From Stylophora pistillata (lineage: Eukaryota): a stretch of 64,000 nucleotides of DNA. Of the stretch, positions 4,977 through 37,200 are shown one piece after another; within the stretch, counting starts at the first letter, position 1; each line of letters opens with the position of its first letter. The stretch spans positions 145,912 to 209,911 of the forward strand of contig NW_019218234.1 of assembly GCF_002571385.2 (NCBI RefSeq), given 5' to 3'. The notes below the pieces were generated by a model that was given only the letters and a program-made list of their open reading frames with translations, ran no database searches and was not told the origin of the DNA. The translations under genes and the position numbers were made by a program.

Positions 4977-5203
4977 NNNNNNNNNNNNNNNNNNNNNNNN
5001 NNNNNNNNNNNNNNNNNNNNNNNNNNNNNNNNNNNNNNNNNNNNNNNNNNNNNNNNNNNNNNNNNNNNNNNNNNNNNNNNNNNNNNNNNNNNNNNNNNNN
5101 NNNNNNNNNNNNNNNNNNNNNNNNNNNNNNNNNNNNNNNNNNNNNNNNNNNNNNNNNNNNNNNNNNNNNNNNNNNNNNNNNNNNNNNNNNNNNNNNNNNN
5201 NNN
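4977..5203. other. Assembly gap (227 N)
   Basis: Run of N. Confidence 1.
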
Positions 5204-5269: not shown

Positions 5270-5705
5270 AAGTATCGGTGAAGCATCGGCCAAGTGTCGA
5301 CCGAGTGTCGGCCAAGTGTCGGCCAAGTATCGGCCAAGTGTCGGTCAAATATCGACCGACTGTCGACCGATATGTCGACCGACTATCGGCCAACATACAT
5401 CGATCGACATATCGACCAACATGCCGGTTGACAGTCTGCCGACAGTCGGTCGACCGACTGTCGACCGACTGTCGACCGACTGTCGACCGACTGTCGACCG
5501 ACTGTCGGCCGACTGTCGACCGACTGTCGACCGACTGTCGACCGACTGTCGACCTACTGTCGACCTACTGTCGACCTACTGTTGACCGACTGTCGACCAC
5601 TATGGCGACCGACATGTCGACCGACATGTCAACATGACCGACATGACCGACATGTCGACATGGTGACCGACATGTCGGTCGCCAGGTCGGTCGACATGTC
5701 GGCTG
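5270..5705. repeat. 11-bp minisatellite (CTGTCGACCGA)n with degenerate 11-12-bp variants
   Basis: Near-perfect CTGTCGACCGA units at about 5447-5598, with degenerate CGGCCAAGTGT and CGACATGT variants on the flanks; explains the repetitive ORFs in 5239-5797. Confidence 0.9.
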
Positions 5706-7384
5706 ACACTAACTATAGTAAAATTGATCCCGCATTTTTAAGAAAAAAATCCTTAATTCAAGGTATCTGGAAACATACAAACTTAACAGTGCACTAATAA
5801 CATACGCATACACAGTGCGAGTTACACCATTAAAGAAACAGCATATCGATTGATTGAACTTATGCTTGAGCTTCTTTCAATGCAGTTCCCAGTTGTGAAC
5901 CACTTTCCAACGTTGATACAGCTCCAGGAATACCAAACAAGCCTCAAACAAGTCACTTTACGAGCAGTTGGCCGTGAGCGATACTTCCATATCGGACTAT
6001 CGGCGAGAAGCGACTCGAGTCATTTGAGCCCGCGGTTGAATTACCAAAAGATCAGCGTTTTAAATGTAAAATTTATATTTACATAAAGTTTCAACTTAAG
6101 GTGTGAGGGAGTATCCGTGGCCTTACGGTATAACGCAAGGTGATCCATGAGATTTTCAGGGTGGCGACGTGGGTGGTTCAAATCCGCCGTTCTCAAGTAA
6201 ATCACGGGTTTTGCCTAACTTCCTTCTTTGTTTTCTTTTTCGGACACAATAATCATTTTCCTGGATGCATACATTTAAAAATAGAAGTATTGATGCCATA
6301 AATGAAATATACGCTGCAAGAGATAAAAGTGTATTCGGAGATTGGGCAAGATTGCAATTAATATTCACAATTGAAAAACGTATACTTTTTTACTCTTTCA
6401 AGATTATCATTGGCTTCTTTTTCACTCCAACACTATTCTTAGCGACAAAAGTCGCCATTTCGTTTGTTTATCACTCGCCAAAAACTATCAAATGCATTCA
6501 AAAGCCTAAACTAGGAAAAGGTTGCAGGAATCGACCAATCGAGCGAGCGAGCGAGCGCCATTCATCACGTCATACCTACAACTCGCTCTTGCGCATGCGC
6601 GCAATTCACGAGTTAAAAAGGTCTAACTTTAACTGATCGCGACTCCTTATATATCTTTTACAAAATGTTCTAGAATGTTTTAGGGATCTGTAATGAAACT
6701 ATTCTTAGTATCATTACATTACTATTGCATCATAACAAAATATGCTAACTAAGGATTTTAGAAAGTTCCATTAAAAGTTCTCAATGAGTCAGCATGACTA
6801 AGCGTTCTAGAAACTTCTTCAGTTCTATTTTCAGCAATTCCGTAACGTAACGCATTCTCCATAACACTTGCTATTGTTGTTGTTGCTGCTTTTTACTTTG
6901 CAATGGAGCTTTGGAATGTGGATAATATTGCAAATACAGAGAACTGGTCAGCACTGGAAATATTCCCTCATGTGTGGCTTGTCAGCCTTTATTCATGTGT
7001 GGCTTGGGCTCTCTCGCGAAGTTTTTTACATTGGGTAAAATATTTCCTCGTGACAGTTTACAGCCTGAGCATTCACTCCTTCTTGTTGTTCAGCTTACCA
7101 AAATAGGAAAGCTTTTAACACTACTGTAGTTTCGTAAGAAATCATCCTTAGGAAAGTTTCTCCCGGTACATCGAGATGACTATAAGTAATCTGCATCAAT
7201 CGATTACATCCCGCATCATTTAAGGCCCTTTACTAATTAATCAAATTTAAAGCAAGTCCATTCAAGCAAATAAAATAGATGTAGTTGGGATCGATTTGGT
7301 TTCCTGGGCTTTTAATTGCGCATGTAGGCTCCTGACCAACTAGACAAATTGAAAGTATGTCCTTTGAAAGAAATGAAATAATTA

Positions 7385-17127: not shown

Positions 17128-17455
17128 TCCTTGCAGTAAAGAGCACTATTTGAGTAATAGTGAAAATCAGACCTGAAAAATTCAGGCCAGTACGGGATTT
17201 GAACCACTGACCTCTGCAAGACTAGTGCAGCACTCTACCAATTGAGCTAAAAGGCCAACTGGGAGCAGGTCATCAAGTTAACAGGCCTGAATTCTACAGG
17301 TCTGATTTTCACTATTGCTTAAATAGTGCTCTTTACTGCGGTGATCGTGGTGGTTTACGTGCGGTGATCGTGAATATTTCTATAACCGCAGTTCAGATAC
17401 ATGAATTTCATTTATTCATTGTGTTTGATTTATCATCTTACAGGTTTATGTCAAA
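17128..17455. mobile_element. Older fold-back copy of the tRNA-Thr-derived repeat
   Basis: GAAAATCAGACCTGAAAAATTCAGGCC…GAACCACTGACCTCTGC…GAGCTAA followed by an inverted partial copy (CAGGCCTGAATTCTACAGGTCTGATTTTC…). Confidence 0.8.
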
Positions 17456-17760: not shown

Positions 17761-20700
17761 TTACTGTCCCAGACTTGTTGGTAAAAAATTTTGTTTTTCC
17801 TTGAGTAACTGACGATCAAGTAGTACATGTCCCAACATTCCTCTTCTAAACCTTTTGAGGAAATCAACATGAGCTCTGCGATAATCTGGTACTCCACCTT
17901 AAAAAATAAAACAGTCACAAATTTGACAAAGCTACAACAAAATAATTCACAATTACAACAATTAAAACAAGTCTTGTGCAATCAAATTTAAGAAAGAAAC
18001 TGTAAGTATAGAAGATTGAACAAAAAAGTTGATTGGAAAGTGTGTGAATTTTTATGATGTCAATAACATGCTAGACGTCTTTGAAATATTTCTATTGTTT
18101 CCAACATACCCGATATTGTAGCATCTAGTTTGTTAGCCCACTGTCTCATGACAAAGTTCACATTATCACTAGGGTTCATGAGGCCAAAACTTTCCACATA
18201 TCTAGGAGAACAGTAACATTTCTAAAATGTTACAATTTGTCATAAGCATCACTACTTTAATCACCAAATTTATGTTTGCTGTAAGCAAAAAGATCACAAT
18301 TACATATGTTTGGAGATGAACTAAAAAAGGGTGCATGTCAAGTCAAATCTCAACTTCTGGACAGCTGCCTATGGCAAAGAGCACCCAACTACCTCTGAAC
18401 ACACCCTTAACCCATAAGAAGGTAAAAGAAGATGGCACAAAAGCAGAAGAGAAAACAGACCTACAGTAGATAGAAAACTTAAATGGCTTTTTCAGTTTAT
18501 TCTCACCAGTGAGACTAAACATGGTATGAACATGTACACCTGATCCAGTTTTCCTGAATCATTTGAATTCTTTCTTGTAATTGTAATTCCTTCTCCTTGC
18601 TCCTTTGTACCCTTGACACCCATTAGTTTCTTATCTCTGGTTAACAATTAACCACACTGTCAATGGAGTTAGGGGTGGGAACGGGAAAGGTGGTGGTTGG
18701 AAATAGGGCAAAACAGTTTTGGAATTCAATGCAAGTAATCCTAACTGTAGTATGTATTTTAACAAGTGTACCCTTTGCTAAGGTTCTTTCACCCCAAAGC
18801 TCCTCATAACTAAGTTTAATTTTCATATAGGGAGTTTGTTACTTGTACTTTTAGAAAGACCCAAAAGATATATCATGTTGTAATGTCTTTTTCAATATTA
18901 CTGGTTGATGCCTTTTTTATTTTTAGATATTCAGAGAAAACTTTAGTTAGTAGTCATGTAATAATACTTATTCATACACTACACCAAAACAGTCACTAAC
19001 TGTACTCTACAAATCTTAGGTAACACCATATGGAACTCACTCAAAACGTTTTTCTTTGTTCAAGGTATACAACAGATAATCAGCAATCAATTCCTCACCA
19101 ACAATATGATCTTTAAAGCAACCTTCAATAACATGGAGTATTAGAACTGATTTATCTATTACTATAAGACATTTTAAAAGTGTTTTGTACCCTGGAAGCT
19201 ACGTGTAAGGGGTAATGATAACTATATGGGGAAAGTCATTGCAATAATCAAAACTCAACAGTCATCATCGAGGGGCATACTGGTAATTATTGGGATGAAC
19301 CCATTATCTCTAAAACTACACAATCTATCAAACAGTAAATGTTTAAACCACAACAATTGGTCATAATGACTGACAATGACACTTGGTGGTGGGAGCCACT
19401 GACACTTTGACAACCTGAGCAGAAGTCATCATCAGTCAAGAGTCATTAATTTTGTTGATGCCATAGTTGATTTGATGAGCTGGGAAACTTGTTACTGAAT
19501 AACTTTCAAGGATTTTGGTATACAGAGAAATTGATGGATTGTTAACTTCAGTTAAAACGACTATCAGTAAGTTACTTGACTTTGGTGGAAAAATTGACCC
19601 AAACAATTCAAGGTAGCTTTATGATGAGGTGTGTTATCAACACATTTTGATATACCAGTACATTATCATTGGGTAACAAACACTGTATGATCATAAAATA
19701 ATAATTGTACAGTATAGACTGGCTGAAACCCAGCAATGCTCTAATAATTATGCTTTAAATGAAGCCATACCTATTAATGCTAGCTTCATTCCTACTTCTG
19801 CAGTTGGTATATATGGAGCCACCACACCTGAAAAAATGAGAAGCATTGTAAGTAAAAAAGTAGCATTCTGCTGATCTACATGACTTTGTATTATCAGCCA
19901 ATCATGTAAGTTAACTGACTGAGATTACTTAACTACACGGGTTACCTGGAGTGTCAATCATGTATGTTACTGGCTCATCACAAACCTGCAAGATATAATT
20001 TCAATACCAAAAATGCCTTTCTAAAAATCAGTTATTGTGCAATGAGTGTAACTAAGGTCAGTAGTGTATACAGTTGTAGAAATGAATCCATAAGAGCCAG
20101 AGTTCCTATCGTTAGCATTTTTAATTTACATCAGATAGTTGCATGTTTTGGTTTTACATAACAAAAAGATTAGGAAACAGACAGAAAGAAAAGGAATAAC
20201 TTGTACAATATAAACTGTTCAGTTTTACCCCAGAGCCTTACTATATCAAAATTATTATCATTTTATTTTATTCTTGTTTTGGAGAATGAGTGGCTATATA
20301 ATCAATAATGATGATCAGATGAAGGAACAGAAATATGGAACTAACAAAAAAATTGACATCATGGCACATACATGTAAAAGGGGAGAGCAGATGCCCTGAA
20401 ACTTCATATTTGAAGTGTATAGGTCATTTAAGTATGAAGGCAATCTTCACAGTGATGAACACTACTTCAGCAGTAATGAAAATAAGGCCTGAAAAAAACT
20501 TCGGGACTGTACAGGATTCGAACCCATGCACCTCTGCGATACCAGTGCCTATGTGAAAATCGTATAATGTCAACTACATAATTTATATGAACAATAAACA
20601 TCCACTCATCACCTCGCAGGTTTATTACAAACTAACATAATGACCAGTTCCCATTTGGCTTGTTAGCTCAGTCGGTAGAGCAATGCACCTGTATCACAGA

Positions 20701-23700
20701 GGTCATGGGTTCCATTCCTGTCCAGGCCTGAATTTTTTTCGGGCATTATTTTCTCTACTGCTTAGGTAGCATTCATCACTGCAAAGATCGCTCTCATACT
20801 CATTTCTTTACCACAGTTCACATAATTACATGATTTTGATATATTCACAAACTTTGTATAGTTCACATTAATTAAAATAATTATACCATTATAGAACAAT
20901 GAGTAAACAGCCAGGGTAAAAAAAAAAAAAGAAAGAAACTACACGTGTTTCTGAAATTGCAACTTTTCAAACTAGTTAAGTCAAGACCATTGAAAATAAG
21001 GATTGTTTAGGGTTACAAAGTTCCTTTTTAATGCTTTTCACCTTTCAAAGAAAGCAATTTCAATTTCTTGAGCTGATGCACATGGAAAAATGTTTACATA
21101 CAGTGTGTAGATAAAGTTTGTAAGCACCTTAATTTTCTCTTGTATGGATCTTGTTATCCCTGGAACAGCACCCACTCTGGTTGCTTTGCCTTCACACAAA
21201 CCAAGAAAACAATATGATAACCATATTTTAATAATAAACAGTTTAAATCAAATGTTCCACAAATTCACAAAGTATTTGCCACTGGAGGCAGGAAAATTAA
21301 ATTACAGTAACTACACTTTGTCTCTCAAATGTGCATGTGTTGTGGGAGAGCAACATTCAGAACCATTACCATGGTACTCTTCATTGCCTTTTTTGCACTT
21401 TTCTAACTCTGCATTTAATATACATTAATTTACAAGACATTCCTTTCACCCACAGATAGCAAATGCTAATCCACATAGGTCATTTTTTCCCTCAACTAAC
21501 TTAATGTAATTACCCTTTAAATTAAAATGAAGATGAAGAAATGCAACATAAAAAGACACACTAGAAAAGAAACTTAGGAGAATTAAAGAAGTTCATTGTT
21601 GAGGAGAAAAAATCCAAGTGTTTCTAAGTGCATGAAACTTACTGCTGAACTGGTTCAATTTAGTTCAATTTTGCTGTTTAAATTTTATTTTAGCATTACC
21701 GGCATCTCATCAGGCTCCATTTAATAATTTCTTAGTACAGGGAGAAGGCTGAAGATTGATGAAAAATTAAAAAAATACCTTTTCGCATGTATTTTCTTCG
21801 GAGTGCATTTACCAAAGACGACTTTCCAGTATTTGGCAAACCACAGATCAAAATATTGTAAGGCTTGTCTGGATTCTATATGCAAAAGTTGAAAGACAGT
21901 CACTTTTTTCAAAATATTTGATATTCCTGAGAGATATTTATGCTGCTTGGATTGCAATTTATAGACAGGAAAGTTGAACTGCTAACGTCATTGTAGGCTG
22001 GTGTTCACTCTGATTTTTTTCATTTACTGTTGGTGTCATGGGTCAGGTCTAGTTATTAAATATACTTTCAGAAGAATAATTAATTTAATGAAAAAAGTCA
22101 TTCTTATTCCAATGTTTGGGAGTTTTAGTTATGATAATCAATTATTACAAGATTCTCTCTTTAGTTAAAGTAAGTAATAATACTTCACAATAATTAACAT
22201 AATTATATGTGACCCTCAGAAATATTATTGATAATTTATATTGGTGCAAGGGAAATAATTCATTACATGGTTAACATACTTCACCACTGATTACAGATTT
22301 TTTTCATTTGATTTTGTGATTGAATGAATGTAAACTGAACAGTCTTTCAACTCAGATTAGTCCTGTTTTCACATTAAATAGAGAGTGGGTCAAACCCTTT
22401 TGACATATTTTAACAAACTAAGGATCCTGAGGCAATTTTGCATGACTATTTCAGACCCAGGACACACATTTCAGGGTGTTACTAAATTGTGGGTTAGCAG
22501 ACCACGGATATTCTGGAACCTGTGGAACCTCTTATTTTTAATGAAAAGCAAAAATATGAAAAAGAATTAAAACAAAAAACCCCAATCTGTTAGAAATTTC
22601 CTTTACAGGTATACGAACCATTTTGTTAAAAGAGGAAGATACTATTCATGCCCTTGATGTCCAAGTTTGGTCCAACTAGAAATTATAGACAAGGGTATGT
22701 GTAATGTCATAAGGAGCAATTACAGCCATCACCAACCCAAAATGTAAGTAAATTGTACAATAATTTAAAAGCTCCACTGGTTTGGTACTGCAATCTAAAT
22801 ATAACACGTCTTCTGGAGGCTCTTAGTGAACCTTTGGAATGGGGAATAAAAATGTTATGGCTAGAATTTCAGGGTGATTTCAAGGGATTATATTGCTACT
22901 TTATTCCCATTTTAATATAAAAATTACTGCACATTCCTTAACTTGCAGAGTAATTTTATAAAGAAACATTTTTGAAATATCAATAACCAAAGATATCTAC
23001 TGACTGATCTAATATATGTTCCTTCATATTCAGCATCCTTTACTGCTTCAAGGACAGCTGGTATAACCTGTAAAGCAAGTCAATAATGATATTAATAACT
23101 TGTGAATTACCAGTAATATTTTAAAACACAATCAATTTTAGGTTCACCATTGACTTCAGTGAACTTTAGGAAGCTGGATATGTATATCACAATTTCTACT
23201 GTTGCAATCTAATTTCCCCTCTGTACTACAAGTAAATTAATTCACTAATGTTTTGTCCAATATATCTATCATTAATGAAGCTTGCCTGGTCAGGGTTGAT
23301 GAAAAGAGTCTAATTCAATGAATTTATTTGTGTTTTCTATTTAATTATTTTCAATGTTGGACAGGATGGCCCAGTCCAGCTTTGAAGCTGGTTTGAATGG
23401 GGGACCTGTATAACCAATTACAAGGCCACAACACAAAAATAGATTATATTTTGTATTACCTGCACTATGAAAAACAACAAGATGATAGCAAAAGAGATGT
23501 TATCAAATGAAGTCATTATTAGTGTAAACTAACTGCAATATGCTCATAAACAAATCACATGTTTAATCTCAAACAGGTGTATTTGACCATATTTTTTTGT
23601 TTACCCTTTTAATGCTGTAATGATATTGTGATTTACTGTCAGTAAGCACAGCTCTAGTTCCCTCACTTTCCAGTTGCCTCAGGATCTCCTACAATTTAAA

Positions 23701-26700
23701 GGCTATCATTGTTGTTATCAATCCCTGTTTAAGAAGCTAGCATCTACATGTTCAGTCTTCAATTTTCCCTAGCTTTGCCATTTCTTGCAAACACCAGTTG
23801 AAAACAGTACATTAGTCTTTTAACTATCATAGGCATGACTACAGCACGAATAGATTTGAATGCATTCTTTAATACTGATGACTTACTAAATAGATTACAG
23901 CATAGAAGGTGGAATGTAATGAAGACTGAAGTGAATAAGCAAGGATGAACAGAAAAACAGAAAGAAAGGAAATGGTAAAATTGAAAATATATTAATTATT
24001 TTGTACAGTAAATATATTACAATGTTCACTGATTAATTACCGGTACTTTAAAGTTACAAAACGACTTGAAGAAAATAAAGAAATTAACTATGGAAACTAG
24101 GGGACATAAGCTAAACTTACATCTGTTGCCATGCTGGACAAAACTGTTGTACTGGTGTGCACAAAGGCAACCAATAGAAAGAAATGTAAACTGTTGAAGC
24201 CAATGGCCCAGTGGGAAAATAAAACAAGAAAATATAATCTGTAGCAGCCAAGGTGAACCATAAAAGAACAACTAAGCAAGAACAACCCAATAGCAATGGG
24301 TTTTCTAATATGCGATAAAAACATCATAGCTGGACGGGGAATTTTCACTAGCCCCCTGATATCCAACAGCACTTTTGTTGCACCCTGCAGAAGGCTACTA
24401 ATACAGCTGTCTACCTTTGGAGTAAAATAACAATAATCAAACCCTTTGCTTGGCCATTCCTATGAGATCCATCTTGTTAAGCACAAGTACATGTGGCCTG
24501 CTTGATAAATTATTTTGAAATTTGGGATTTCTCCCAGTAAAGGGAATTTATACCTCAGTCAAGGAATATAAAAATGTACCTTTGATGAGAAGTATATTCA
24601 GAAACTGAAAATAAACTGAGAAGGAGTTGTATGGAATTCTAGGACAACCATTAGTAAACATATATTAGGTGTCTTAATATTTTATCAACATTAGAGCATC
24701 AAAGTATGTTCCAGAGAACTTCAATCAAAAAACCTAGAGAAACCCTTAAAGTTATTCAGTACACTTTGCCATAGCAACATTCCTAGAAAAGTCAATAAAC
24801 TTGAAGAGGAGTTATGTTAAAAAGTCACAGACTACATATAGGGGCCTAAGAGATAAAAAGTCTTGTCATGCTTTTAATGTACCTAGAGTAAAGAAATAAA
24901 TTTCACATTTTTGTCAATCTTCTTGGGTTTTAAAATTTTCCAAAGAATGTTCTGTATAGAATTTAATGCTGACCTCAACCTTGATTGACATGGGTATGTC
25001 TGCAGGTGCATGGGTATGCACTGTGTGTAGGAGGAATATTTGTGATGAAAAAGACAGGCACAAGTGGGAGAGAAAGACTGATGATTAAGTTGAATGTTGA
25101 GGTGCAAAATAAATGAAACGTCCTTGACCCACTGTGGTCAATCAAGATCAAAGTAAAGGATATTCTTGCATCATGAACTTCCACAACACAGTCACACTTT
25201 GGAAGCTTTAGTTGCATCTTTCGAAAACCTAACAAGATAACCACACAACATTCTTGCATGTTAAGGCTTAACTTTCATCACAACTCAAGGCACAATATAA
25301 TATTCCCACAAGAACCTGCAGCCTGAAATTTGCCTTCAACCTTTAACTCATGACCCATTTTTACAGGAATGAAAAGAGCTCTGCACGTCTGTCACATGAC
25401 AGTGATATTTAAAGAATGGCATAACTTGTAAGAGAAAGCTGCTGGATGACAAGTTTTTGCCATCCAATAAAATGTTGAATTTTAAAACTATCCTGAAATC
25501 TCGGGCTTAAATGTTGTTGGCAAGTTGTGTGATTCCTTTCAATTTATTTTGAGAATGAGATGCACCATGTATGTACATGTACCACCTTATAGGGAATTGT
25601 ACAACGAAAACTTTCCCATAAAAATTCTAAAAATTTATGGTAAAGTAACTGGCTTTTTTTCCCTATTCAACTTTTGTAATATTGTATGGTCCTCAACATA
25701 ACCTTCTAATTTGAACCTCTTACAGAAACACACATGTACTTGTCAAAATAACGTGTGGAGCTAAATATAGTGCTCACATGGTGTCCTAATGTTTTGCAGT
25801 GTGATAACCTTAATTTGTTCCAATCAACATTAATGGTCTCCATGTTGCTTGTTCTACAAATTTGTATCATTATAATAATCTCCTCCCAAATTCCCAAAAT
25901 TACCGTTATTTCATTCTTATCAACCACTGGTGCCCTAAGCTCTTTCAGAAAGTAGGTTACATGTTAGACTGCATCACAAAACATCAAACATACCTTTAAG
26001 TACATGCATCTGAAAGGGATTTCAGGTCATTTTCCCACCAATGTAATCATGTGAACAATTTTCCAATGAAAAAGTCTAACTCTCTTTTGACTGGCTCATG
26101 CTTATTCCCTTTGTTGTTATTTTCCCCATGTAGTATAATTTAAGCAATTTTTTTTCTTCATATTTTTCCTTTTATAAGGAAAGGTACATGTACAATACAC
26201 AACATGCCAGTAACTATCTACAGTAGTATGAAAACTGTAGAACATATGCTGAGCAGTTTACAATCTGGCTGGGCAGAATTTTTATGTGAAGACTTTGGTA
26301 ACGACCTTTGGCGATCAACAAGATTAATTCCCTCTTCTCTCTCACTCTCAAATCTCTTTGGTTTTTCCGCAAAATTGATTTCGAAATAAATTTTGTGGTA
26401 CTACATTTGTTTTTAAAAAGATTGAATCCTGGCCTAAACACAATTTGTTATTTAATAATCCTTCACAAAAAGTAATTTAGAAAGTTAAAACAAGAGGTAA
26501 TTATAGATAACAATTACATTAATCAGTGTGACTCTCATTCATTGTTACCTTTGTTACCTTTATGTTTCGGTGAAAGCTTTTTCTTTAATTTGAATAACAT
26601 CTGTTTTCTTTATCATCCACTTGCTAAAAAATTGTTAAGTTTATGGCCTAAGTCCTAAATCATTTGGGTTCTTTGGGCAACCACTTTGTTAAGTGTCAGA

Positions 26701-29700
26701 AGAAAATAAAATTTGTTATCCACCACCATAAGTTGGCCTATGGCCTCAGATGGTATCCAAGACCTTTGGCACAGTTTTTCCCCACACATGTATATGCTAG
26801 ATTTTAATCCTTCAGCAATAATTGATTGATTATTGTTATATACCAAGATAAGCATGTTGCACAACTATTGTAATTAGCACCTCAACACTGGCACCTTTGT
26901 TATTCACACCCACCAACCACAATACATGTAATTACCATATCTGCACCTGCACCCGTATATACCTGTGGACAAGCTCATTAAAAGTGCAGTTTTGAACACG
27001 ATAAGTAACGGTCAACATGGTGGCAGCGGTGCTTGTCTCTTAATTTCACAGTCAAGAAGATTCAAGCCGATGAGCGATATGGCCTCAAACACTCCCTTCT
27101 AGTAATTCAAAACAACGGGGGATGATAAACACAATGTGGAGGTCTACATCTAAGACTTAGTTAACTACTGTATTATGCAAAACTGGTTTGATCCATCCAA
27201 GGAAACAGAAGCAGCGAAGTGGACGAAACCAGAGAAAGCGATGGTATGTCTTCGAGCATCGTTATCCCCTACAGCCAGAGCGATCTACAAATACAGTTTA
27301 GGATTGTCTGAAGAAGATCAGAGCAAACCGCACACGGTTATCAATGCTCTGAAAGAGTACTATGGCGCTAGCATCGGGGTCTCAGGGCGAGAGGCAAAAA
27401 TTCCTTTCCCTGCTACAAAATGAAGAGGAATCCATCGCATCTTGGGAAACAAGGATTCGCAATCAAGCTGCACAGTGCGAGTAAGAAAACTTCACTGATG
27501 AATTGATGAGAAATCAGTTCATCGCGGGATTAACATCTGAATCTCTCCGCGTAAAACTGATTGGGAAAGGCCACAGGCATCGAGATGCAGCTCAATCAAA
27601 AGTCACTCTACGAGAAGTTGTTGAAATAGCCAAAAGCCATGAGACAACCACATTTGCAAACCAGTTAATGAAAAATGCCTGAGGCAACCAGCAGGAGCAG
27701 GTAAACTTCACAAAGAAGACAAAACCCGAATACCGCAGCTCCAATACCTTAACAGCGGCCTGCTTCTGGTGTTGCGGTGAACATCCCAGCCCTTGTCAAC
27801 AGCATTGTCCAGCGTTTGCGAAACGGTGCAACAAGTGTGGAATCATTGGCCATTTTGCTCGTGCATGCAGAGGAGGAACGAGAATTGGTAGAAGACGACA
27901 GCAGTGATCGATTTTTGTTGATGATGACCCTGATGAAGAGGCATTTGTTATCAATGATCAGGCAGCGCCAGTCGGTGCAAAGAAATTCTTCACTCACCTG
28001 CACCTCATCCATGGGAGGCAGTCGAAAATTGTTAAAGCTCAAATCGACTCGGCGTCGACCTGTAACACTATGCCAGGTTCAGTATTAAGCCAGCTATTCC
28101 CGAATTTGAAGATCTCAAAGACAAAAAGCAGAATCAACACCTACGGAAGCCAAACAACGAAACCAGAAGGTCAAGTAACCCTCGTGTGTGAAAGGAAGGG
28201 CAAATTCCACACAATTGACTTCCTAGTGGTGAACGTTCCAGATGACAAGCCTCCACTTCTTAGCGGACGAGAGGCACAGGCTTTAAAGTATTTGACCATC
28301 TATGCAGACGAGACAAACGCAGTCGAAGAGGAGACCACATGAAACACACAGAAACTGCCTGCACTCGGCAAATTGACTTCAGAGGACATCCTAAAGCACT
28401 ACCCCAACGTTTTTAAACAAGGACGCAGGAAGCCTCTTGGGAGCCCCATGCACATTGACTTGGACCCATCAGTCACACCTGTTCATGCCCCTACTCGCCG
28501 TGTTCCAGTGGCAAAATTAAACAGGGTCAATGAAGAGCTGAAAAGGCTCTGTGAAGAAGGAATTATAAGGCCGGTAACCCAACCTACCGATTGGCTGTCC
28601 AATATGCTGGTTAAGGAAAAACCTAATGGCAAACTTCGCATCTGCATCGATCTAAGCCAAACCATAAACAAGGCAATCAAAAGGCCCCAATACACCATAC
28701 CCACAATCGAAGAGAGGCTACCGCTTCTGACAAACGCCAAGGTATTCACCGTCGTTGATGTTTCTGAGGCGTTTCATACTATTGAACTGGATGAAGACTC
28801 TTCCCTTCTAACAACTTTCCGGGGGCCAAATGGTCGCTATTGTAACAATCGGATGCCCTTTGGTATTGCCTCAGGACCAGAAGAATATCAGCGGCGACAA
28901 CATGAATTTCTGGACGGATTGAATGGGGTAATCAACATCACAGATGACATCTGTGTTTATGGCTGTGGCAACACTAAGAAGCTGACATTGATCATGACCG
29001 AAATCTTATCCATCTAGTTGAGAAGTGTAATGAACATGATCTTCGACTCTCCATGAAAAAAATTCAATTTAAGTCCAGCTCTGTTTCATTTATGGAGCAC
29101 CGACTTACCAAAAATGGAGTACAGCCGGATCCAAGCAAAGTAGCTGCGATCACAGGAATACCAACCTCAGCAGATAAGGCCGCATTGCAACGTTTCCTAG
29201 GAATGTGCCAGTACTTGTCCAAGTTCTGCCCAAACCTGTCCCAAACAGTCCTTCCATTGAGGAAACTAACTAGGGATGACACTGAATTCCTTTGGTCAGA
29301 AGTCCATGAGCCATGAGGCAGCCTTCAACTCAGCCAAAACTCTCGTAGCCTCAACAACAGTATTGCGCTATTATGACGTCAGCCTTCCTGTGACTCTTCA
29401 AGTAGACGCATCTGACAGTGCCATAGGTGGGGTCTTACTTCAGGAGGGCCATCCTGTCTGCTTCACGTCACACACCCTCAGCGCTACAGAAAAGAATTAT
29501 GCTCATATTGAGAAAGAGTGCTTGGCAATTGTGTCCTGTATGGTGAAATGGCATCATTACCTTTATAGAAAGTGAGACATGATGGTCCACTCTGATCATC
29601 AGCCTCCCGAGACAATTTTCAAAAAACCTCTGAGCAGAGCTCCACGCAGGCTTCAGAGAATGATGCTGAGACTTCAGAACTATCAATTCACTGTACAGTA

Positions 29701-32700
29701 CTAGAAAAGAAAAGAGCTCTTCGTGGCCAACACTCTGTCTCGTGCACCTCTCAATGGTGGAACCCAGTCCCCCTCCAGAATGACGCAAGACTACGATGTG
29801 TTTCATGTGAATCTCACACAAATGGACCTGTCAACATACCTTGTCAAACCCGGTACAATGAACCAGATCAGAAAGGAAACTGAGAAAGACCCATCACTGA
29901 TGACACTGAACAACAAGGTACTTGGTGGCTGGCCCCACCAAAAGAGTGAAGTACCAGAGGAAATCAGAGCATACTGGGACCTCAGAGATGAGATTTCAGT
30001 ATATGATGGAGTGCTTTTCAAATATCATCAAGTCATTGTTCCCACATCACTCAGACCCGAGCTCTTACAGAAGATACACAAAGCACACCAATTAAGGTGC
30101 CAACAGTAGTATACGAATAGCCCAGGAATCCGTTTACTGGCCGGGAATGCAAGCAGCAATCAGGCAAACATGCTCCTCATGAGGTGTGTGTTCTCAATAC
30201 TTAAGTGAATGGCCCCATGAACCCATGCAGTCACATGCCATACCATCTCGGCCATGGGAAAGAGTGAGTCCAGATCTGTTTCAACTAAATGGCAGTAACT
30301 ACCTTGTGCTTGTGGACCACTACAGTGACTATATTGAACTTGGGCCTTTAAAAAACACATCAGCCGTTGCAGTCATACGAGCCTTGAAGCGAAACTTCGC
30401 ACGTCACAGCATTCCTGACGAATGCGTGACAGATAACGGTCCACAGTTTGTCAGCCACGAATATGCACGCTTTGCACGTGAATACGGATTCACCAGCATT
30501 AGATTATCTCCCTACCATAGTCGAGGAAATGGCAAAGCCGAATCTGAAGTCAAGATTGCCAAAAATATTCTGAAAAAATTCCACTTTGAGGACCCATATC
30601 TGGCTCTTCTGGCCTATCGAAACACGCCACAACAGGGATACCAGTACTCACCAGCACAGCGACTCAAGTCCCGGAAACTTCATGACATCATCCCAACAGC
30701 AGCAAGCCAGCTACTCCCACAAGCTGCATCAGGACAGGTTATAGTGAGAAACATCGAAGAAAGGAGAGCCCGATCAAAAGCCCATTACAACAAGAGGGCA
30801 TCAGGCCCGCTGAAACCATTTGCCCCAGGAGAAGAGGTATTTCTCAAGCCACGACCAACAAACAAGTCTCAGCCATGGATCTATGGGGAGGTGATCGAAC
30901 AACCCACATAGAGATCCTGCATGATCAAGACGGCAATGGGACCTATTCAACGAAACTATGCCCAAATCCGAGAGGCTAGAACTGAGCCAGCTGAAAGACA
31001 CACCACCGGGATGAACCAGCTTGAAATCGCATCCACACACTCTGAACAGGAGCAGGAAAGACAACCAGCTGACCTTGAGCAAATGGAGCTAGAGAACAGA
31101 CTACCTCGAGGAGAAGGCGGACTTCGCCATCCACATATGGAATCAGAAAGCGCGCCATCTAGTCCAGATGAGTGTGGACATTGCCGTTCACAAAGGACTC
31201 GCAAACAGCCGTCAAGGTTCAAAGACTATGCCGTGTAGGCTCACAAGCGAGATAAACTGAACTATAATTGATTAGTACACTTATTCATTTATTTATCAGT
31301 CCTCTTTCCAAGAGAGAGAGGGTGTTGCACAACTATTGTAATTAGCACCTCAACACTTGCACCTTCGTTATTCACACCCACCAACCACAATACATGTAAT
31401 TACAATATCTGCACCTGCACCCGTATATATCTGTGGACAAGCTCATTAAAAGTGCAGTTTTGAACATGATAAGTAACGGTCAACAAGCCCTGTGATTGTT
31501 TGATTCTTAGGGATGACTGCCCCTAATCAAATTACAATGTATCCTGACCGTGATACAATTGCACAGTTATTGCCCTTATGCTGAATACAACAGCTTGTTT
31601 TTGTCACATGATTGTTTATGAGAAAGTCTATGTAATGTTTTGATAGTATTGTTTACCAGAAGTTGTGTTTGCAGAAGTTCTCGGACAGTGTAAACATGCA
31701 AAGGATCATGGATGGTTGTGTGGGCCATGCTTTCTGGGTTTCATGGCTGCTGAATAAAGTGTAGTTTCTTTTTATAGTTATATCTGGTTTATTAAATAGC
31801 CATCCGAGTGACATCGTTAAATTGGCGACAAGGATTCAATTCGTTTTGTGAGGTAGTGGATGTTTTTCAAAGTCATTTGCACGGAAAGTCCAGGCATATT
31901 CTCAGAAGATGATGGACAATAGAACCAGTTTGAGTACAACTTCAAGTTCACAAGCTTCGCCAGCTGCGATGTTTGTTCCTCTTCTTGATGTGGCCAGCCT
32001 TACTCCCTTCAATCCAAAGGAAGATCCAAACACACTTGCAGTTCACTGGAAGTTGTGGAAACACTTGTTTAATCTGTATGGTGGCAAAAGGTATTACACA
32101 GGATGAACAGAAAACTGTATTGCTGTTGCATACTCAAGGGTTGAATTTACAGGAGCTTTATTACACATTATTGACTGGTGCAGATATCAAGCCATTTGCT
32201 GAGAGTATGGAGTTGTTGGATAACTATTTTGCACCACAGTTGAATGTTCCATTCAAAAGACATCAGTTTAGGCAAATGGAGCAAGCATCAGGAGAGTCAA
32301 TGGATCAGTTTGTTTGTCGGTTGAGGCAGAAAGTGATCTCATGCGAGTTTCAAAATGTCGATGAGGCAATAAGAGATCAGCTTATTGAGAAATGCAGGGA
32401 TCCCAGCCTTCACCCTAAGTTTCTTGAGAAAGGAAATGCTACTCTGAAGGATTTACAAGATTTGGCTTGTGTGCAGGAAGCAGTGAACATGCAGGTCAAG
32501 GCTATGGATCAGTCATCCAGTCAGGTAAATACTGTTTCTGGCAGACCTCACAGCAAAGGAAAAGGAAAAAGGGCAGCACAGGGTAGAGGCAGAGGAAATA
32601 AGCCCAGTAAACAGTCTAGTGGTTCTCAGGAGACAAAAGTGAGAGGCTGTTTTCGCTGTAATTACACTGACCATATGGCATGTGACCAGAATTGTCCTGC

Positions 32701-35700
32701 CCGTAGCACGAAATGAAATGCATGTGGCACGATTGGACATTTTGCAGTCTGTTGCAAAACAAAGGAGTGAAAACCCTTTGCAAGGGATCACGAGTGAAGG
32801 AAACATACATGGGGGAGAGCTTACCAACTATCAGAGGATTCAGCCACTGGCCAACAAGATCATTATGCATTTGCAGTTGGAGTTGGTCAGCCTACACGTG
32901 GTAGTAAAGTAGATTTAAAGATTGTAGGAGTGATGCTACCCGCAGTATTTATTGACTCTGGCATGTCATGCAATGTGATCGACCAAGCAACCTGGGAAAT
33001 TTTGAAGAAGAAGAGTGTCCAGTGTGAATTCAAGAAATCAAGCAGAAAGTTGTTTGCTTAAGGGTAGAAAGATCCTATTGAGGTGATCAGGACATTTGTG
33101 TCTGAGATTGTATGTGAAATCAGTGGTATCAGTTGCGTGGATGAATTCACAGTGGTTAAAGGTCAAGGAAGACCTCTACTCGCAAAGAACACTGCAGAGA
33201 AGTTGGGCATATTAAGGGTCGGCCCTGATGTGTGTTCATTAACTACTGAAGGAAATGATGCCGAGATTTGTGAGAAGTAAAGAGAGGTTTTTACAGGGGT
33301 CGGGAAACTGAAGGATTTCAGCTGAAGTTACATGTAAAAGACTATGTCAAGCCTGTTGCACAACCCATACTGAGACTGCCATTTGGGTTAAGAGCCAGGG
33401 TTGACGAGAAGTTGAATGAGCTGTTAGCAAAAGACATCATCGAGGAGGTGTCACACAACCCAACTGAGTGGGTCGCCATTGGTTGTTGTCCCAAAGACAG
33501 ATGGTGACATTCGGATTTGTGTGGACATGCACAGGGCGAATTCAGCAATAGAGAGGGAAAGACATCCTATCCCTATAATTGAGAAAGTCTTGTACGACCT
33601 TAATAGCTCAACTCTTTTCTTAAAGCTCAACCTCAAGTGCAGCTTCCACCAGGTGGAACTTGATGAAAGACTGCACGAGATCACAATGTTTGTTACACAC
33701 CGTGGTTTGTACAGGTAAAAGTATTTGATCTTTGGGGTAACATCGGCACCTGAAAAGTACCAGAAAATTGTGGCAGATGTTTTGCATGGTTGGGAGGGAG
33801 TGGCTAATTTGGCAGATTTGATTTGATTGTGCATGGTTGTGGCATAAAGGAACATGACAGGAATTTACATGCCGTACTGACCCGATTGAAAGAGAAAGGA
33901 CTAACTTTGAATGGGGACAAATGCCACTTTCGTCTTCCCAAGCTGACATTCTTCAGTCATGACCTGAGCAGGCAAGGTGTTGCACCCAGTGAAGAGAAAG
34001 TAGCTGCCATCTTAAAGGCAAGCCCTCCACAAGATGCTTCACAGGTCAGATCATCTTTTCAGCTTGTACAGTATTCTGCAAAGTTTCTTCCCAACTTTGC
34101 CCAAAAAACAGAACCACTCAGGAGCCTCTTGAGGAAGAATGAGCCTTTCATCTGGGGTGAAGCACAAGAAAGATCCTTCCACAACTTGAAACAGCTCGTT
34201 GCACAGGCCACTTCGCTTGTATATTTCAGAGGAGACTGTAACACGTGTATTATTACCGATGCAGATCCACAAGGTTTAGGTGTGGTGCTGACTCAACTTT
34301 AGGATGGCGAGTGGCAAGCAATCTCATACACGTCCAGGAACCTCACTAAAGTGGAACGGAGATACAGTCAGACCGAGAAAGAGGCCGTTGCCGTAGTATG
34401 GGCTCGTGAGAGGTTCAATATTTATGTGTACTGGCAGAAATTTGAACTTGAAACTGATCATAAGCCACTCGAGTGTATTTTTGGCAGGCTTTCAAAACCT
34501 TCAGCACGTATCAAACGTTGGGTTCTGAGGTTACAGGGGTATGACTACAGAGTGGTTTATTGGCCTGGCAAAGCAAACATTGCAGACTCTCTCGAAAGAC
34601 TCAATCAATGTGAACCTAAAGACTAAAGTGTGAAATTTGATTTTGTCAAGGCAGTCGCTGAGGAAAGTTTACTTGTTGCTCTGACAGCGAAACAAGTTGA
34701 ACTGGCTTTTGATATTAACCCAGAACTTGCTAGCCTGAGACAGTACATTTTAAGTGGGGACTGGTCTCAATGTAAGATGACAGCTTATGTGTGTGTCAAG
34801 GATGAATTGCGTGTGTTGGGCAAACTCATTTTGCATGGTACAAGAATTGTTGTTCCGAAGGCTTTATGGGGAGAAGTCTTGCGTCTTGCCCACGAGGGAC
34901 ATCAGTGCATCGTAAAAATGAAGGCACGTTTAAGGACAAAGGTTTGGTGGCCAAAGATTGACTCAGATGTAGAGTGAACGTGTAAGTCTTGTCATGGATG
35001 CCAAGTCGTAGGTGAATTTCAAGTTCCTGAGCCCATGAAAAGAGTAAAGCCACCTACTGGACCCTGTCAAGACATCGCCATAGACTTGATGGGTCCTCTT
35101 CCCACTGGAGAAAGTTTGCTCGTAGTCGTAGACTATACCGGTCCCAAGCTTTGGAACGATTTACCATATTCCTTGAAAACATCTGAATCTGTTGCAATTT
35201 TCAAGAAGAACCTTACAACATACTTGTTCAAAGACGCTTTTTAATTTACGATTTTTTATAATGTAATTGCTATGTTAATTAGTCTATAATTTTGTAAAGC
35301 GCTATGGAGAACTAGTCGAGCTTAGCGCTATATAATTGCTTTTTATTTTTATTATTATTATTATTATTACAGTAGATTCTACGAGGTAGTGATCATGCGC
35401 TCAACAGCAGCTAAGAGAGTGGTGGATGTGCTGACACAGATATTCTACAGATATGGATTTCCATTTACACTCAAATCTGACAACAGTCCTAAGTTTTGGT
35501 GTGAGGAGTTTGAGAAGTTTCTCTCTGATCACGGAATCAAACACTTGACATCTCCACCATTCTGGCCGCAGGCTAATGGACATGTCGAAAGACAGAATAG
35601 AACTCTGCTTAAGTCTTTGAAAAATGCTCACATCGAGGGAAAGAACTGGCACGAAGAACTGCAGAAGTTTCTGTTAGCCTATAGAACCACACCGCAAACA

Positions 35701-37032
35701 AGTACTGGTGTTACTCCTGCATTCCTCATGTTTGGTAGAGAGTTGAAAACAAAACTTCCAGAGTTAAGGTGCACTGGTAACCTGTTGGACAAGGGGCCAG
35801 AGATCGTGATTGGAATCACAAGTTGGTCCACAAAGAACATGCTGACAACAAGCGGGGTGCCGCTGAAAGCCCTGTAACACCTGGGGATCTGGATTTAGTG
35901 AAGAACATGAAAACGTCTGGCAAGCTAGAAGCAAATGTTGAGAGTGAGCCATACACAGTGCAGACTAAAGGAGGCAGTGAGGTGACTGTTAGGTCCAAAG
36001 AGGGTGTGGAACATAGGCGGAACAGTGCATTGGTTAAGCGGTACAACCCACCAGGGGAATTACCGGAAGCCACAGAGGCCATTTCTCAAGACGCTTCCCT
36101 TCCACCATAGGAGAATATAGCAACATCAAGACCAAGGCAGACTGTCAGAATGCTGGAGAAGTACAAGGACTATGTACTTTATGAACTGAACTCTGTTGGC
36201 ACGTTGGACTTATGTTGACGTCTGTTAGATGCGGTTTCATGTTACTAAATTTTATTGAACAGTTTTCATGCAGATAGATTTTTTTTTGCTGTTATCTGTT
36301 TGTCCCTAAGGAAAGGAAGGGATGTAATGTTTTGATAGTATTGTTTACTGGAAGTTGTGTTTGCGGAAGTTCTCAGACATTGTAAACATGCAAAGGATCA
36401 AGGATAGTTGTGTGGGCCATGCTTTCTGGGTGTCATGGCGGCTGAATAAAGTGTAGTTTCTTTTTATAGTTAAATCTGGTTTGTTGCACGGCCATCCAGG
36501 TGACATCATTACAGTCTAAATATATAGCAAAGCACTTAATGTATGGTCCCTTGGGAAACTAGTTAGTTTTATTTTCCCAAGAGTCCTGATGTTTGCCTCG
36601 ACTTTGTCTTGGGGAACATCAGGACTCTCTGGAAAACACAGCTAACTGTTTCCCTCAGAACCATACATTAAGTGCACATTTATTTGTACCAGAAATTTAA
36701 TTGAATAAAAACAATCATTTTTGTCCCACTTTGATTCTTCTTTTTTTACTTCCCCATAGTTTTGGCTCATAACTCCCAAAGGATTGTGGTCAGATAGACA
36801 GGGGAGGAGTGGGGGTGAAAGTACTGTCCTCTTGGCAATCTGGTGGCAATCATTCATGCAAATTTTTTCGAAGAAATAGAGGTTTGGAACACTTCTCACC
36901 TTTTGCCATGTGGCCTGGAAACCATTTCAAAAATATGCTAGGATGAAAATGTACTGGAAGGCGAAAAGATGGTCGGAAACTTGCATTTGCAAGCCATAAC
37001 TCCGTGCGGTTCACGTAAAGGCTCACTGCCAT
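17761..37032 (-). CDS. MTG1: Mitochondrial ribosome-associated GTPase 1 (RbgA/YlqF family circularly permuted GTPase), 12 exons, 338 aa
   Basis: Exons (minus): 37032-36900, 25228-25164, 24547-24443, 23688-23605, 23067-23005, 21875-21779, 21189-21128, 19985-19946, 19827-19771, 19122-19041, 18201-18110, 17897-17761. They total 1017 nt with consistent phases and no internal stops. Motifs: [24 protein letters not shown]4 LVLNKMDL, G1 [10 protein letters not shown]2 PGITR, G3 [27 protein letters not shown]. Start context AACATGGC. Confidence 0.95.
20430..20850. mobile_element. Older inverted pair of the tRNA-Thr-derived repeat in MTG1 intron 7
   Basis: Partial minus-strand tRNA-like copy (about 20503-20548) and plus-strand copy GGCTTGTTAGCTCAGTCGGTAGAGC…CCAGGCCT (about 20657-20729), with inverted flanks. 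Confidence 0.75.
24548..25163 (-). other. U12-type (minor spliceosome) intron with AT-AA termini, MTG1 intron 2
   Basis: 5' site ATATCCTTT (25163-25155); branch point TTCCTTGAC (24566-24558); intron ends GGTATAA; the join restores HDAR|IPFTGRNP. Confidence 0.9.
26855..31485 (+). mobile_element. Full-length decayed Ty3/Gypsy LTR retrotransposon (element 1) in MTG1 intron 1
   Basis: 163-bp LTRs TG…CA at 26855-27017 and 31323-31485 (5 mismatches); PBS TGGTGGCAGCGGTG (tRNA-Leu-like) at 27018; polypurine tract AGAGAGAGAGGG before the 3' LTR; imperfect TSD AGCA/AGCC; domain order gag, protease, RT, RNase H, integrase. Confidence 0.95.
27070..31238 (+). pseudogene. Disrupted gag-pol of Gypsy element 1
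   Basis: CCHC knuckle ([14 protein letters not shown]), protease [10 protein letters not shown] ([30 protein letters not shown]), RNase H ([14 protein letters not shown]), integrase ([21 protein letters not shown]); many stops and frameshifts. Confidence 0.9.
31909..36110 (+). pseudogene. Disrupted gag-pol of Gypsy element 2
   Basis: gag ([30 protein letters not shown]), protease IDSG, RT ([12 protein letters not shown]), RNase H ([21 protein letters not shown]), integrase ([18 protein letters not shown]); many stops. Confidence 0.9.
35137..35367 (+). mobile_element. 5'-truncated CR1/L2-type LINE inserted in the integrase of element 2
   Basis: [34 protein letters not shown], then a 3' UTR and (ATT)n tail; removing it restores the integrase VVVDY|YSRFYEV. 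Confidence 0.85.
36532..36675. mobile_element. Palindromic MITE
   Basis: GCACTTAATGTATGGT / ACCATACATTAAGTGC ends and an internal inverted repeat AGAGTCCTGATGTT / AACATCAGGACTCT. Confidence 0.75.
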
Positions 37033-37200
37033 GTTGGATAACCGAAGAGAGCATGCTGGGACTACATCGAATGCCGCTGGAACAAGAAGACCGCAGACGG
37101 ATAAACAACGCGTTGCGTGAGTCGTTCGTCGTTCAGTCGTCCAGTGACTGACAGGACAACTAACTCCCAAGTGAGATACGTCCATCATACGTAACTCCCA
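37000..37200. promoter_or_regulatory. Candidate CpG-rich bidirectional promoter shared by MTG1 and the dystrophin-like gene
   Basis: Divergent ATGs at 37032 (-) and 37053/37071 (+); local CpG enrichment inside CpG-poor flanks; GCATGCTGGGA (reverse complement TCCCAGCATGC, ZNF143/Staf-like) at 37051-37061. Confidence 0.55.

What the first reader, a model, noticed from the sequence alone, without database searches (positions are those of the whole stretch)
24548..25163. MTG1 intron 2 is a minor-spliceosome intron with rare AT-AA ends
Seen: the conserved peptide EVHDAR|IPFTGRNP can be joined only by removing a 616-nt intron. It starts ATATCCTTT (perfect U12 5' site), has TTCCTTGAC with 11 nt between the branch A and the exon, and ends …GGTATAA. 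The only nearby AG lies about 5 nt past the branch A and would give GTA TAA (stop). Established: U12 introns are normally GT-AG or AT-AC, and AT-AA is a rare tolerated variant. Inference: expression of a mitoribosome assembly GTPase depends on minor splicing of a non-canonical intron that gene predictors would likely mis-annotate.
Basis: partly seen in the sequence, partly recalled or inferred. Interest (0 to 1): 0.8.

Follow-up and report, generated by a model that had tools for sequence, protein, structure and literature searches.

The report
Coral MTG1 AT-AA minor intron
The second intron of a coral's mitochondrial-ribosome GTPase gene (MTG1) is really removed at AT…AA ends by the rare "minor" splicing machinery, but this is the coral version of a minor intron already known at the same spot in human and mouse MTG1, so it is a well-documented ordinary case.

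Summary
Observation confirmed. A 12-exon MTG1 gene lies on the minus strand (ATG 37032, stop 17761). Ten introns are GT-AG. Intron 2 (25163..24548, 616 nt) starts ATATCCTTT, has TTCCTTGAC with 11 nt between the branch A and the exon, and ends AA.

RNA contigs from four runs in four studies join exon 2 to exon 3 exactly as predicted (GCAAGA|ATTCCC). Intron-bearing contigs in the same runs show no difference at the AA end, the branch site or the donor (the donor seen in X4 and X9 only), so it is not an assembly error.

The genome has U11, U12, U4atac and U6atac genes and a CENATAC/CCDC84 gene. Human and mouse MTG1 are listed minor-intron genes with an AT-AC intron at the same codon boundary (HDAR|IP). 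The human intron is retained in ZRSR2-mutant cells.

Of 22 orthologous introns (this one plus 21 from metagenome contigs), 8 are AT-AC, 10 GT-AG, 1 GT-AT and 3 AT-AA. The AT-AA ones are this coral and two coral-like contigs.

AT-AA is the commonest non-canonical minor-intron terminus in the literature. Verdict: a real U12-type AT-AA intron, a new member of a known kind, of modest interest. The scan noted other minor introns in this genome (UTP25, PEN-2), not this one.

The parts
36900..37032 (-). MTG1 exon 1 (ATG at 37032..37030; ends ...TGG TTT CCA GGC CAC ATG GCA AAA G, phase 1)
   Evidence: Motif WFPGHMAKG found, sequence. Its 3' end is seen joined to exon 2 in contigs of four runs (loose ends at 25230).
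25229..36899 (-). Intron 1, GT-AG, 11,671 nt. It carries broken retroelement pol pieces on the opposite strand.
25164..25228 (-). MTG1 exon 2 (65 nt...[21 protein letters not shown])
   Evidence: Contig piece 25152..25230 with flanking exon 1 and exon 3 letters (tables 7 and 8).
24548..25163 (-). Intron 2, 616 nt, U12-type with AT-AA ends, phase 0
25155..25163 (-). U12-type 5' splice site ATATCCTTT
   Evidence: The first eight bases (ATATCCTT) match the human and mouse MTG1 donor quoted, and the full nine match 10 orthologous metagenome introns.
24558..24566 (-). Branch-site motif TTCCTTGAC (branch A inferred at 24559; 11 nt to the exon)
   Evidence: It can pair with the GAGUAAGGAA stretch of the coral U12 snRNA, with G-U at the R position and the A bulged (inference). 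Orthologues have 9-15 nt.
24548..24549 (-). Terminal dinucleotide AA of intron 2
   Evidence: No differing letter at 24548-24566 in intron-bearing contigs of X1, X4, X7 and X9 (tables 3 and 8).
24554..24555 (-). Unused AG, 4 nt after the branch A. Its use would add GTATAA (in-frame TAA).
   Evidence: No contig with that junction was listed (contigs show presence, not absence).
24443..24547 (-). MTG1 exon 3 (105 nt; [35 protein letters not shown]; carries the G4 NKxD motif)
   Evidence: Solved MTG1 chains, residues 59-92, E 3e-8. TIGR03596 YlqF positions 33-65. 107-nt contigs 24442..24548 in all four runs.
17761..23688 (-). MTG1 exons 4-12: 23688-23605, 23067-23005, 21875-21779 (P-loop GLPNTGKS), 21189-21128, 19985-19946, 19827-19771, 19122-19041, 18201-18110, 17897-17761 (includes the stop). 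All flanked by GT-AG introns.
   Evidence: open 1017-nt reading frame. Joints of introns 3-6 appear in all four runs, and the E7|E8 junction as a loose end. Exon 6 hits MMR_HSR1 and YlqF.

Best explanation
Intron 2 of the coral MTG1 gene (window 25163..24548, minus strand) is a U12-type (minor-spliceosome) intron of the A-type (AT-AN) class with AT-AA ends.

Inferred mechanism:
- U11, and later U6atac, recognise the donor /ATATCCTTT.
- U12 snRNA pairs with TTCCTTGAC and bulges the A at 24559 as branch point.
- The 3' cut is set mainly by distance from the branch (11 nt), not by the identity of the last base. So AA is used, and the AG only 4 nt from the branch A is ignored.

Splicing joins ...HDAR to IPFTGRNP... 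in phase 0 and is required for the 338-codon reading frame of this circularly permuted YlqF/RbgA-type GTPase.

The intron is the orthologue of the AT-AC minor intron at the same codon boundary in human and mouse MTG1. In the coral lineage the last base is A instead of C.

Shown: the sequence motifs, the exact mRNA junction, the AA in independent data, the presence of the minor snRNA genes, and positional orthology. Inferred: which spliceosome acts in the coral, the branch point used, and the cut register within the four equivalent positions.
For: Sequence:
- The donor is 9/9 to the consensus and the branch motif is 9/9 to TTCCTTRAY, 11 nt from the exon, with no pyrimidine tract between them.
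- Chance expectation is 0.9 and 1.4 copies per window.

RNA:
- In X1, X4, X7 and X9 (four studies) contigs lying on 25152..25230 continue with 17 letters that are exon 3, and on the other side with exon 1.
- The two mismatches in the 25152-25163 overlap are exactly those expected for exon 3 read over the intron start.
- One 144-nt contig in X7 (depth 259) spans E1-E2-E3.
- Intron contigs covering at least 24519..25123 in all four runs (X4 to 25191, X9 to 25182) show no change at the AA or the branch site, and those of X4 and X9, which reach the donor, none there.
- Their depth is 8-17, against 105-197 for exon 3.

Gene model: 10 GT-AG introns plus this one give an open 1017-nt frame.

Single copy in the assembly, no retrocopy.

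Machinery: U12 97 bits, U6atac 108.6, U11 87.9, U4atac 63.4, and CCDC84/CENATAC exons.

Orthology:
- Human and mouse MTG1 are listed as minor-intron genes with donor ...CGG|ATATCCTT and acceptor ...CAC|ATCCCA, i.e. HDAR|IP.
- The human intron is retained in ZRSR2-mutant cells (PSI 0.028 to 0.125, adjusted p 0.008). The human AT-AA introns of PIGB and MSH3 respond too.
- All 21 environmental orthologues with both ends have U12 donor and branch motifs at this position.

Literature: AT-AA is a recognised minor terminus (PMC1557818 Table 2; PMC10639083; PMC8280824).
Against: - No experiment in a cnidarian shows that this intron needs the minor spliceosome.
- The data are assembled contigs, not raw reads. 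Rare alternative junctions (for example the AG at 24554) or a minor AC allele could be hidden, and the branch point is not mapped.
- RNA data cannot separate the four equivalent cut registers.
- The coral U6atac has the 'CC variant' box (GCCGA for AAGGA). It pairs poorly with ..CCUUU, so the textbook U6atac-donor pairing is not fully applicable here. This is a known unsolved point (PMC2396436).
Confidence: 0.92

Rival explanations
1. The same mRNA is made, but the chemical cut lies in another of the equivalent registers. For example, an AT-AT intron (25161..24546), or AA-TA or TA-AA.
For: The base before the donor and the last intron base are both A, and the first two intron bases (AT) equal the first two exon-3 bases. 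Registers -1 to +2 therefore give identical mRNA. AT-AT minor introns exist (PMC1557818 Table 2).
Against: Only the AT-AA register puts the cut immediately 5' of ATATCCTTT. That is where it lies in the orthologues whose ends are unambiguous: AT-AC and GT-AG, and human and mouse. In the AT-AT register the donor would read ATCCTTTAC, which does not fit the consensus.
Confidence: 0.03
2. The intron is removed by the major (U2-type) spliceosome, or by some other route, at non-canonical sites.
For: Rare U2-type AT-AC introns are known (PMC1557818).
Against: - The donor and the branch motif both match the U12 consensus perfectly.
- The branch site is only 11 nt from the 3' end.
- There is no pyrimidine tract and no AG.
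- All orthologues carry U12 motifs.
- The human orthologue responds to ZRSR2 mutation.
Confidence: 0.02
3. The AA is an assembly or sequencing error, or a private allele, and the usual state in this species is AC.
For: Single-base errors occur in draft assemblies. Contigs can drop rare variants.
Against: Four runs from four studies (2014-2023) have intron-bearing contigs across 24519-25123 or further, with no differing letter at 24548-24566. They do show other polymorphisms in the intron (table 3). Two other coral-like contigs (L021, L031) also end AA.
Confidence: 0.02
4. The joined contigs come from a processed retrocopy in DNA rather than from spliced RNA.
For: The tool warns that RNA libraries can contain DNA, and two of the runs are only guessed to be RNA.
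Against: - The region is single copy in the 398-Mb assembly.
- X1 and X9 are recorded poly(A) RNA-seq.
- Exon contigs are roughly 6-25 times deeper than the contigs of this intron.
- A retrocopy would in any case prove the same splice.
Confidence: 0.01

Closest known systems
Human and mouse MTG1 minor intron (AT-AC), listed in the minor-intron catalogue of Olthof et al. 2019 (PMC6717393, supplement) and in Datasets EV1-EV3 of de Wolf et al. 2021 (PMC8280824)
   Same: Same gene, same codon boundary (..HDAR | IP..), same phase 0, same donor ATATCCTT, and a branch motif close to the 3' end.
   Different: The mammalian intron ends AC and the coral one AA. The branch motifs differ (TACCTTAAT or GCCTTAAC versus TTCCTTGAC). 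The length is 385 nt in human, 1812 nt in mouse and 616 nt here.
Known AT-AA U12-type introns (for example human PIGB, MSH3, RASGRP4; 3 in human, 4 in mouse, 1 in Arabidopsis in Sheth et al. 2006, PMC1557818). This is the 'A-type' AT-AN class of de Wolf et al. 2021.
   Same: AT start, AA end, U12 donor and branch motifs. The human examples are retained when ZRSR2 is mutated. MSH3 shows the same AT-AA/AT-AC switch between species.
   Different: Different genes. This case is in a cnidarian, whose U6atac has the CC-variant donor-pairing box (PMC2396436).
YlqF/RbgA-MTG1 family of circularly permuted ribosome-assembly GTPases (TIGR03596; solved MTG1 chains 9e9c_z and 7o9k_C)
   Same: Exon 3 aligns to MTG1 residues 59-92 (E 3e-8). 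The G4 motif NKMD (exon 3) precedes the P-loop GLPNTGKS (exon 6), which is the permuted order. Exon-wise hits to TIGR03596 and PF01926.
   Different: Nothing notable. It looks like an ordinary MTG1 orthologue of 338 residues.

Membership tests
U12-type (minor-spliceosome) intron | Extended 5' splice-site consensus /[AG]TATCCTT | tested here: met
   ATATCCTTT at 25163..25155.
U12-type (minor-spliceosome) intron | Branch-site consensus TCCTTRAY close to the 3' end (about 10-20 nt), without a pyrimidine tract | tested here: met
   TTCCTTGAC at 24566..24558, with 11 nt between the A and the exon. The stretch in between (CTGAGGTATAA) is purine-rich. Orthologues have 9-15 nt.
U12-type (minor-spliceosome) intron | Canonical terminal dinucleotides AT-AC or GT-AG | tested here: not met
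   The ends are AT-AA. This places it in the recognised non-canonical AT-AN subclass (PMC1557818, PMC8280824, PMC10639083), not outside the family.
U12-type (minor-spliceosome) intron | The organism has U11, U12, U4atac and U6atac snRNAs | tested here: met
   All four are above the Rfam gathering scores in G000. The U12 gene contains GAGUAAGGAA.
U12-type (minor-spliceosome) intron | Positional orthology with an accepted U12-type intron | tested here: met
   Human and mouse MTG1 AT-AC intron at HDAR|IP. 21 environmental orthologues have U12 motifs.
U12-type (minor-spliceosome) intron | Splicing depends on minor-spliceosome components | not testable with these tools
   Only the human orthologue has such data: ZRSR2 mutation, adjusted p 0.008.
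U12-type (minor-spliceosome) intron | The intron is actually removed at the stated boundaries | tested here: met
   E2|E3 junction contigs in X1, X4, X7 and X9.
MTG1 / YlqF (RbgA) circularly permuted GTPase | Sequence similarity to family models and to solved MTG1 | tested here: met
   - Exon 3 versus solved MTG1 chains: E 3e-8.
- Exons 3 and 6 have TIGR03596 as best family, at profile positions 33-65 and 117-142.
- PF01926 scores above its cut-off on exon 6.
- The full-length cut-off could not be tested because only single exons were searched.
MTG1 / YlqF (RbgA) circularly permuted GTPase | Permuted motif order: G4 (NKxD) before G1 (GxxxxGKS) | tested here: met
   NKMD is in exon 3. GLPNTGKS is in exon 6.

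The most novel reading that the evidence does not exclude
The C-to-A change at the last intron base is not a private quirk. It would be an old, stably kept state of stony corals, shared by lineages whose intron bodies have diverged beyond alignment (the window versus L021/L031). This would be a clade-wide AT-AC to AT-AA subtype switch in an intron that predates the cnidarian-bilaterian split, in animals whose U6atac carries the CC-variant donor box. It would give a natural system for asking whether the 3'-terminal base of A-type minor introns is neutral or tuned.
Probability: 0.5. Interest if true: 0.35.

Novelty: new member of a known kind. Interest (0 to 1): 0.22.

Why it matters
Practically, it matters for annotation. 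A predictor that allows only GT-AG, GC-AG or AT-AC introns will break or distort the coral MTG1 model at this point. The correct model is given here with RNA support.

Biologically, it adds one well-supported cnidarian example to the known AT-AN class. It also shows that the MTG1 minor intron is old (shared by corals, insect-like and other invertebrate contigs, and mammals), while its terminal dinucleotides have switched several times: AT-AC, GT-AG, GT-AT and AT-AA.

It does not reveal a new mechanism.

Tried and rejected
- **Assembly error.** Rejected: four independent runs read AA.
- **Second copy or retrocopy.** None found in G000.
- **Other U12 introns in the window.** The other ATATCCTTT and TTCCTTRAC matches, for example 50816-50824 and 48207-48215, showed no exon-like context on reading. 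Dropped.
- **U6atac oddity.** I took the changed U6atac donor box (GCCGA for AAGGA) for a possible new finding. López et al. 2008 (PMC2396436) already describe this 'CC variant' for cnidarians.
- **A third cnidarian-like lineage.** L010, L018, L022 and L034 carry the same donor, but exon 3 is not on those contigs. A loose regex hit in L010 ('AT-GT') has no tblastn support and was discarded.
- **Public annotation of this junction.** Not tested. The spliced model may only be searched exon by exon, and the protein search accepts only hits of 0.55-1.75 times the query length. The joined step was left out.
- The computation was redone from references.
- **Handling limits.** The N runs (4977-5203, 55748-55770) were left alone. 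The short human and mouse motifs quoted come from paper supplements and were not sent to any search.

Full report
**What is in the sequence.** The gene lies on the minus strand.
- Exon 2 ends ...GAA GTT CAT GAT GCA AGA at 25164 (EVHDAR).
- The next nine bases, 25163..25155, are ATATCCTTT.
- TTCCTTGAC lies at 24566..24558 with its A at 24559. Eleven bases (CTGAGGTATAA) follow up to 24548.
- Exon 3 starts at 24547 with ATT CCC TTT ACT GGG AGA AAT CCC (IPFTGRNP).
- The only AG nearby (24555-24554) would add GTA TAA, an in-frame stop.

One refinement is needed. The base before the donor and the last intron base are both A, and the first two intron bases equal the first two exon-3 bases. Four cut registers (AA-TA, AT-AA, TA-AA, AT-AT) therefore give the same mRNA. 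None is canonical, and only AT-AA puts the cut in front of the U12 donor consensus.

ATATCCTTT is expected 0.9 times and TTCCTTRAC 1.4 times in both strands of the window. Their presence exactly at the two ends of the homology gap is not chance.

**The gene.**
- Exon 1 (37032..36900...WFPGHMAKG) was found 11.7 kb upstream.
- With the junctions seen in RNA contigs, the model has 12 exons and an open 1017-nt frame of 338 codons. It has ten GT-AG introns and this single AT-AA intron. So 'intron 2' is the right number.
- Exon 3 alone matches solved structures of mitochondrial ribosome-associated GTPase 1 at residues 59-92 (E 3e-8).
- Exons 3 and 6 have the YlqF model TIGR03596 as best family. Exon 6 passes the Pfam MMR_HSR1 cut-off.
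- The G4 motif (NKMD, exon 3) precedes the P-loop (GLPNTGKS, exon 6), as in circularly permuted YlqF/RbgA/MTG1 GTPases.
- Exons were searched one by one by reference. The joined model was not sent to any search tool.

**RNA evidence.** One look-up found 20 runs that hold the region. The organism labels show a coral. Contigs of four runs from four studies (X1, X4, X7, X9) were laid on 20900-25400.
- Introns 3-6 appear as clean GT-AG joints in all four runs.
- For intron 2 the aligner did not call a joint, because the first 12 bases of exon 3 resemble the first 12 bases of the intron (two mismatches).
- Instead, each run has a contig lying on 25152..25230 that continues with the 17 letters AATTTGGGATTTCTCCC (plus strand). 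These are exactly exon 3 bases 13-29. On the other side the contig continues with the end of exon 1.
- In X7 this is a single 144-nt contig (depth 259) with exactly two differing letters in the overlap, as predicted for GCAAGA|ATTCCCTTTACTGGG...
- Each run also has a 107-nt contig 24442..24548, which is exon 3 bounded by the two branch points.

The junction 25164|24547 is thus present in all four runs.

The same runs hold intron-bearing contigs from 24519 to at least 25123 (X4 to 25191, X9 to 25182).
- They show several polymorphisms inside the intron, but none at the AA end or the branch motif. The X4 and X9 contigs also cover the donor and show no change there (tables 3, 4, 8).
- The region is single copy in the 398-Mb assembly, so a retrocopy does not explain the joined form.
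- Intron-2 contigs have depth 8-17 against 105-197 for exon 3. With the tool's caveat about depth, this suggests efficient removal.

**Machinery.**
- The genome holds U12 (97 bits), U6atac (108.6), U11 (87.9 and 83) and U4atac (63.4) genes, all above Rfam thresholds.
- The U12 gene contains GAGUAAGGAA. This can pair with UUCCUUGAC, with a G-U pair at the R position and the A bulged (inference).
- Exons of a CCDC84/CENATAC gene are present. In human cells this factor promotes splicing of A-type (AT-AN) minor introns (PMC8280824).

**Comparison with what is known.**
- MTG1 is already a catalogued minor-intron gene in human and mouse (supplement of PMC6717393).
- The flanks quoted in the datasets of PMC8280824 show the human intron follows ...GAT GCC CGG and precedes ATC CCA. 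That is the same HDAR|IP boundary in phase 0, with donor ATATCCTT and ends AT-AC.
- In ZRSR2-mutant patient cells its retention rises from PSI 0.028 to 0.125 (adjusted p 0.008).
- The human AT-AA introns of PIGB and MSH3 respond even more strongly.
- AT-AA was counted 3, 4 and 1 times in human, mouse and Arabidopsis (PMC1557818).
- It is the most common non-canonical minor terminus in animals and plants. Non-canonical ends make up about 3.8% of conserved animal minor introns (PMC10639083).
- Switches between AT-AA and AT-AC between species are documented, for example MSH3.

**Orthologues from metagenomes.** A pattern for EVHDAR followed by RTATCCTT found 33 contigs. For 21 of them exon 3 is on the contig. 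Counting the window, that gives 22 introns:

| Ends | Number | Loci |
|---|---|---|
| AT-AC | 8 | includes duplicates |
| GT-AG | 10 | |
| GT-AT | 1 | L038 |
| AT-AA | 3 | the window, L021, L031 |

- All have a U12 branch motif, with 9-15 nt between the branch A and the exon.
- L021 and L031 are coral-like: their exon 3 peptides are 100% (21 aa on the contig) and 94% identical to the window's.
- They resemble each other (92% in exons, 81% over 89 nt of intron).
- They differ from the window by 13-22% in exon bases, and their intron bodies no longer align with it.
- The AA end is thus shared by at least two well-separated coral lineages. With only two effectively independent lineages and an A+T-rich intron, this is weak evidence for constraint.
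- A third cnidarian-like group (L010, L018, L022, L034) has the same donor, but its 3' end is not on the contigs.

**Verdict.** This is a genuine, efficiently spliced U12-type intron with AT-AA ends, the coral orthologue of the known mammalian MTG1 AT-AC minor intron.
- Still inferred: the use of the minor spliceosome in the coral, the branch point, and the cut register.
- It is a new member of a known kind.
- Its value lies in correct annotation and as one more data point on subtype switching of an ancient minor intron.

**Limits.**
- All read evidence comes from assembled contigs, which can hide rare isoforms or alleles.
- The public annotation of this junction could not be checked under the exon-by-exon rule.

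Noticed in passing
G000:C133:450103-450230 (L003:1501-1628, +): The only U6atac gene found in the assembly reads ...AUGAGCCGAGAGAAGG... where the Rfam consensus has ...AUGAAAGGAGAGAAGG.... That is three adjacent changes in the box thought to pair with the U12-type donor. No canonical-box copy exists within two mismatches. This is the 'CC variant' already reported for cnidarians by López et al. 2008 (PMC2396436). How such a U6atac reads an ATATCCTTT donor remains an open question in the literature. The MTG1 intron here is an efficiently spliced example.
   Followed up: yes
window 23688-23690 and 36900 (run X9, table 7): In one of four runs a contig joins exon 1 directly to exon 4, skipping exons 2 and 3, the two exons that flank the minor intron. 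This shifts the frame and gives a stop after 8 codons. It looks like the unproductive exon skipping around minor introns described in mammals.
   Followed up: partly
L038:~5400-6861 (-), contig WLWD01000709.1: The orthologous MTG1 intron in this environmental eukaryote contig has a GTATCCTTG donor and a TTCTTTAAC branch motif 10 nt from the exon, and it ends AT. It appears to be a GT-AT minor intron, another rare terminus at the same position.
   Followed up: partly
window 28373-35877 (+), inside MTG1 intron 1: Fragmented pol pieces of LTR-type retroelements lie antisense to MTG1: reverse transcriptase 28373-29014, integrase 30186-30908 and 35389-35874, RNase H 33823-34299. They are split over separate short frames, so they are broken copies. 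They explain the G+C-richer block and the 11.7-kb length of intron 1. Described only.
   Followed up: partly
window 17184-17256 (-) and about 20500-20770 (-): A tRNA-Thr(AGT)-like sequence sits in the 3' flank of MTG1. A similar tRNA-like, SINE-looking element with shared flanks sits in intron 7 (seen on reading). It is probably the same element family that the scan noted at 53806-55783.
   Followed up: no
window 36900-37116: The MTG1 start codon (37032) lies close to a divergently oriented gene, as another note of the scan says (s1-784548). An upstream out-of-frame ATG at 37054 precedes the MTG1 ATG.
   Followed up: no
G000:C22:68122-83007 (+), L041-L044: Exon-wise matches to Pfam CCDC84 (CENATAC), the human factor that favours A-type minor introns. 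The last matching exon lies 14 kb from the first three.
   Followed up: no
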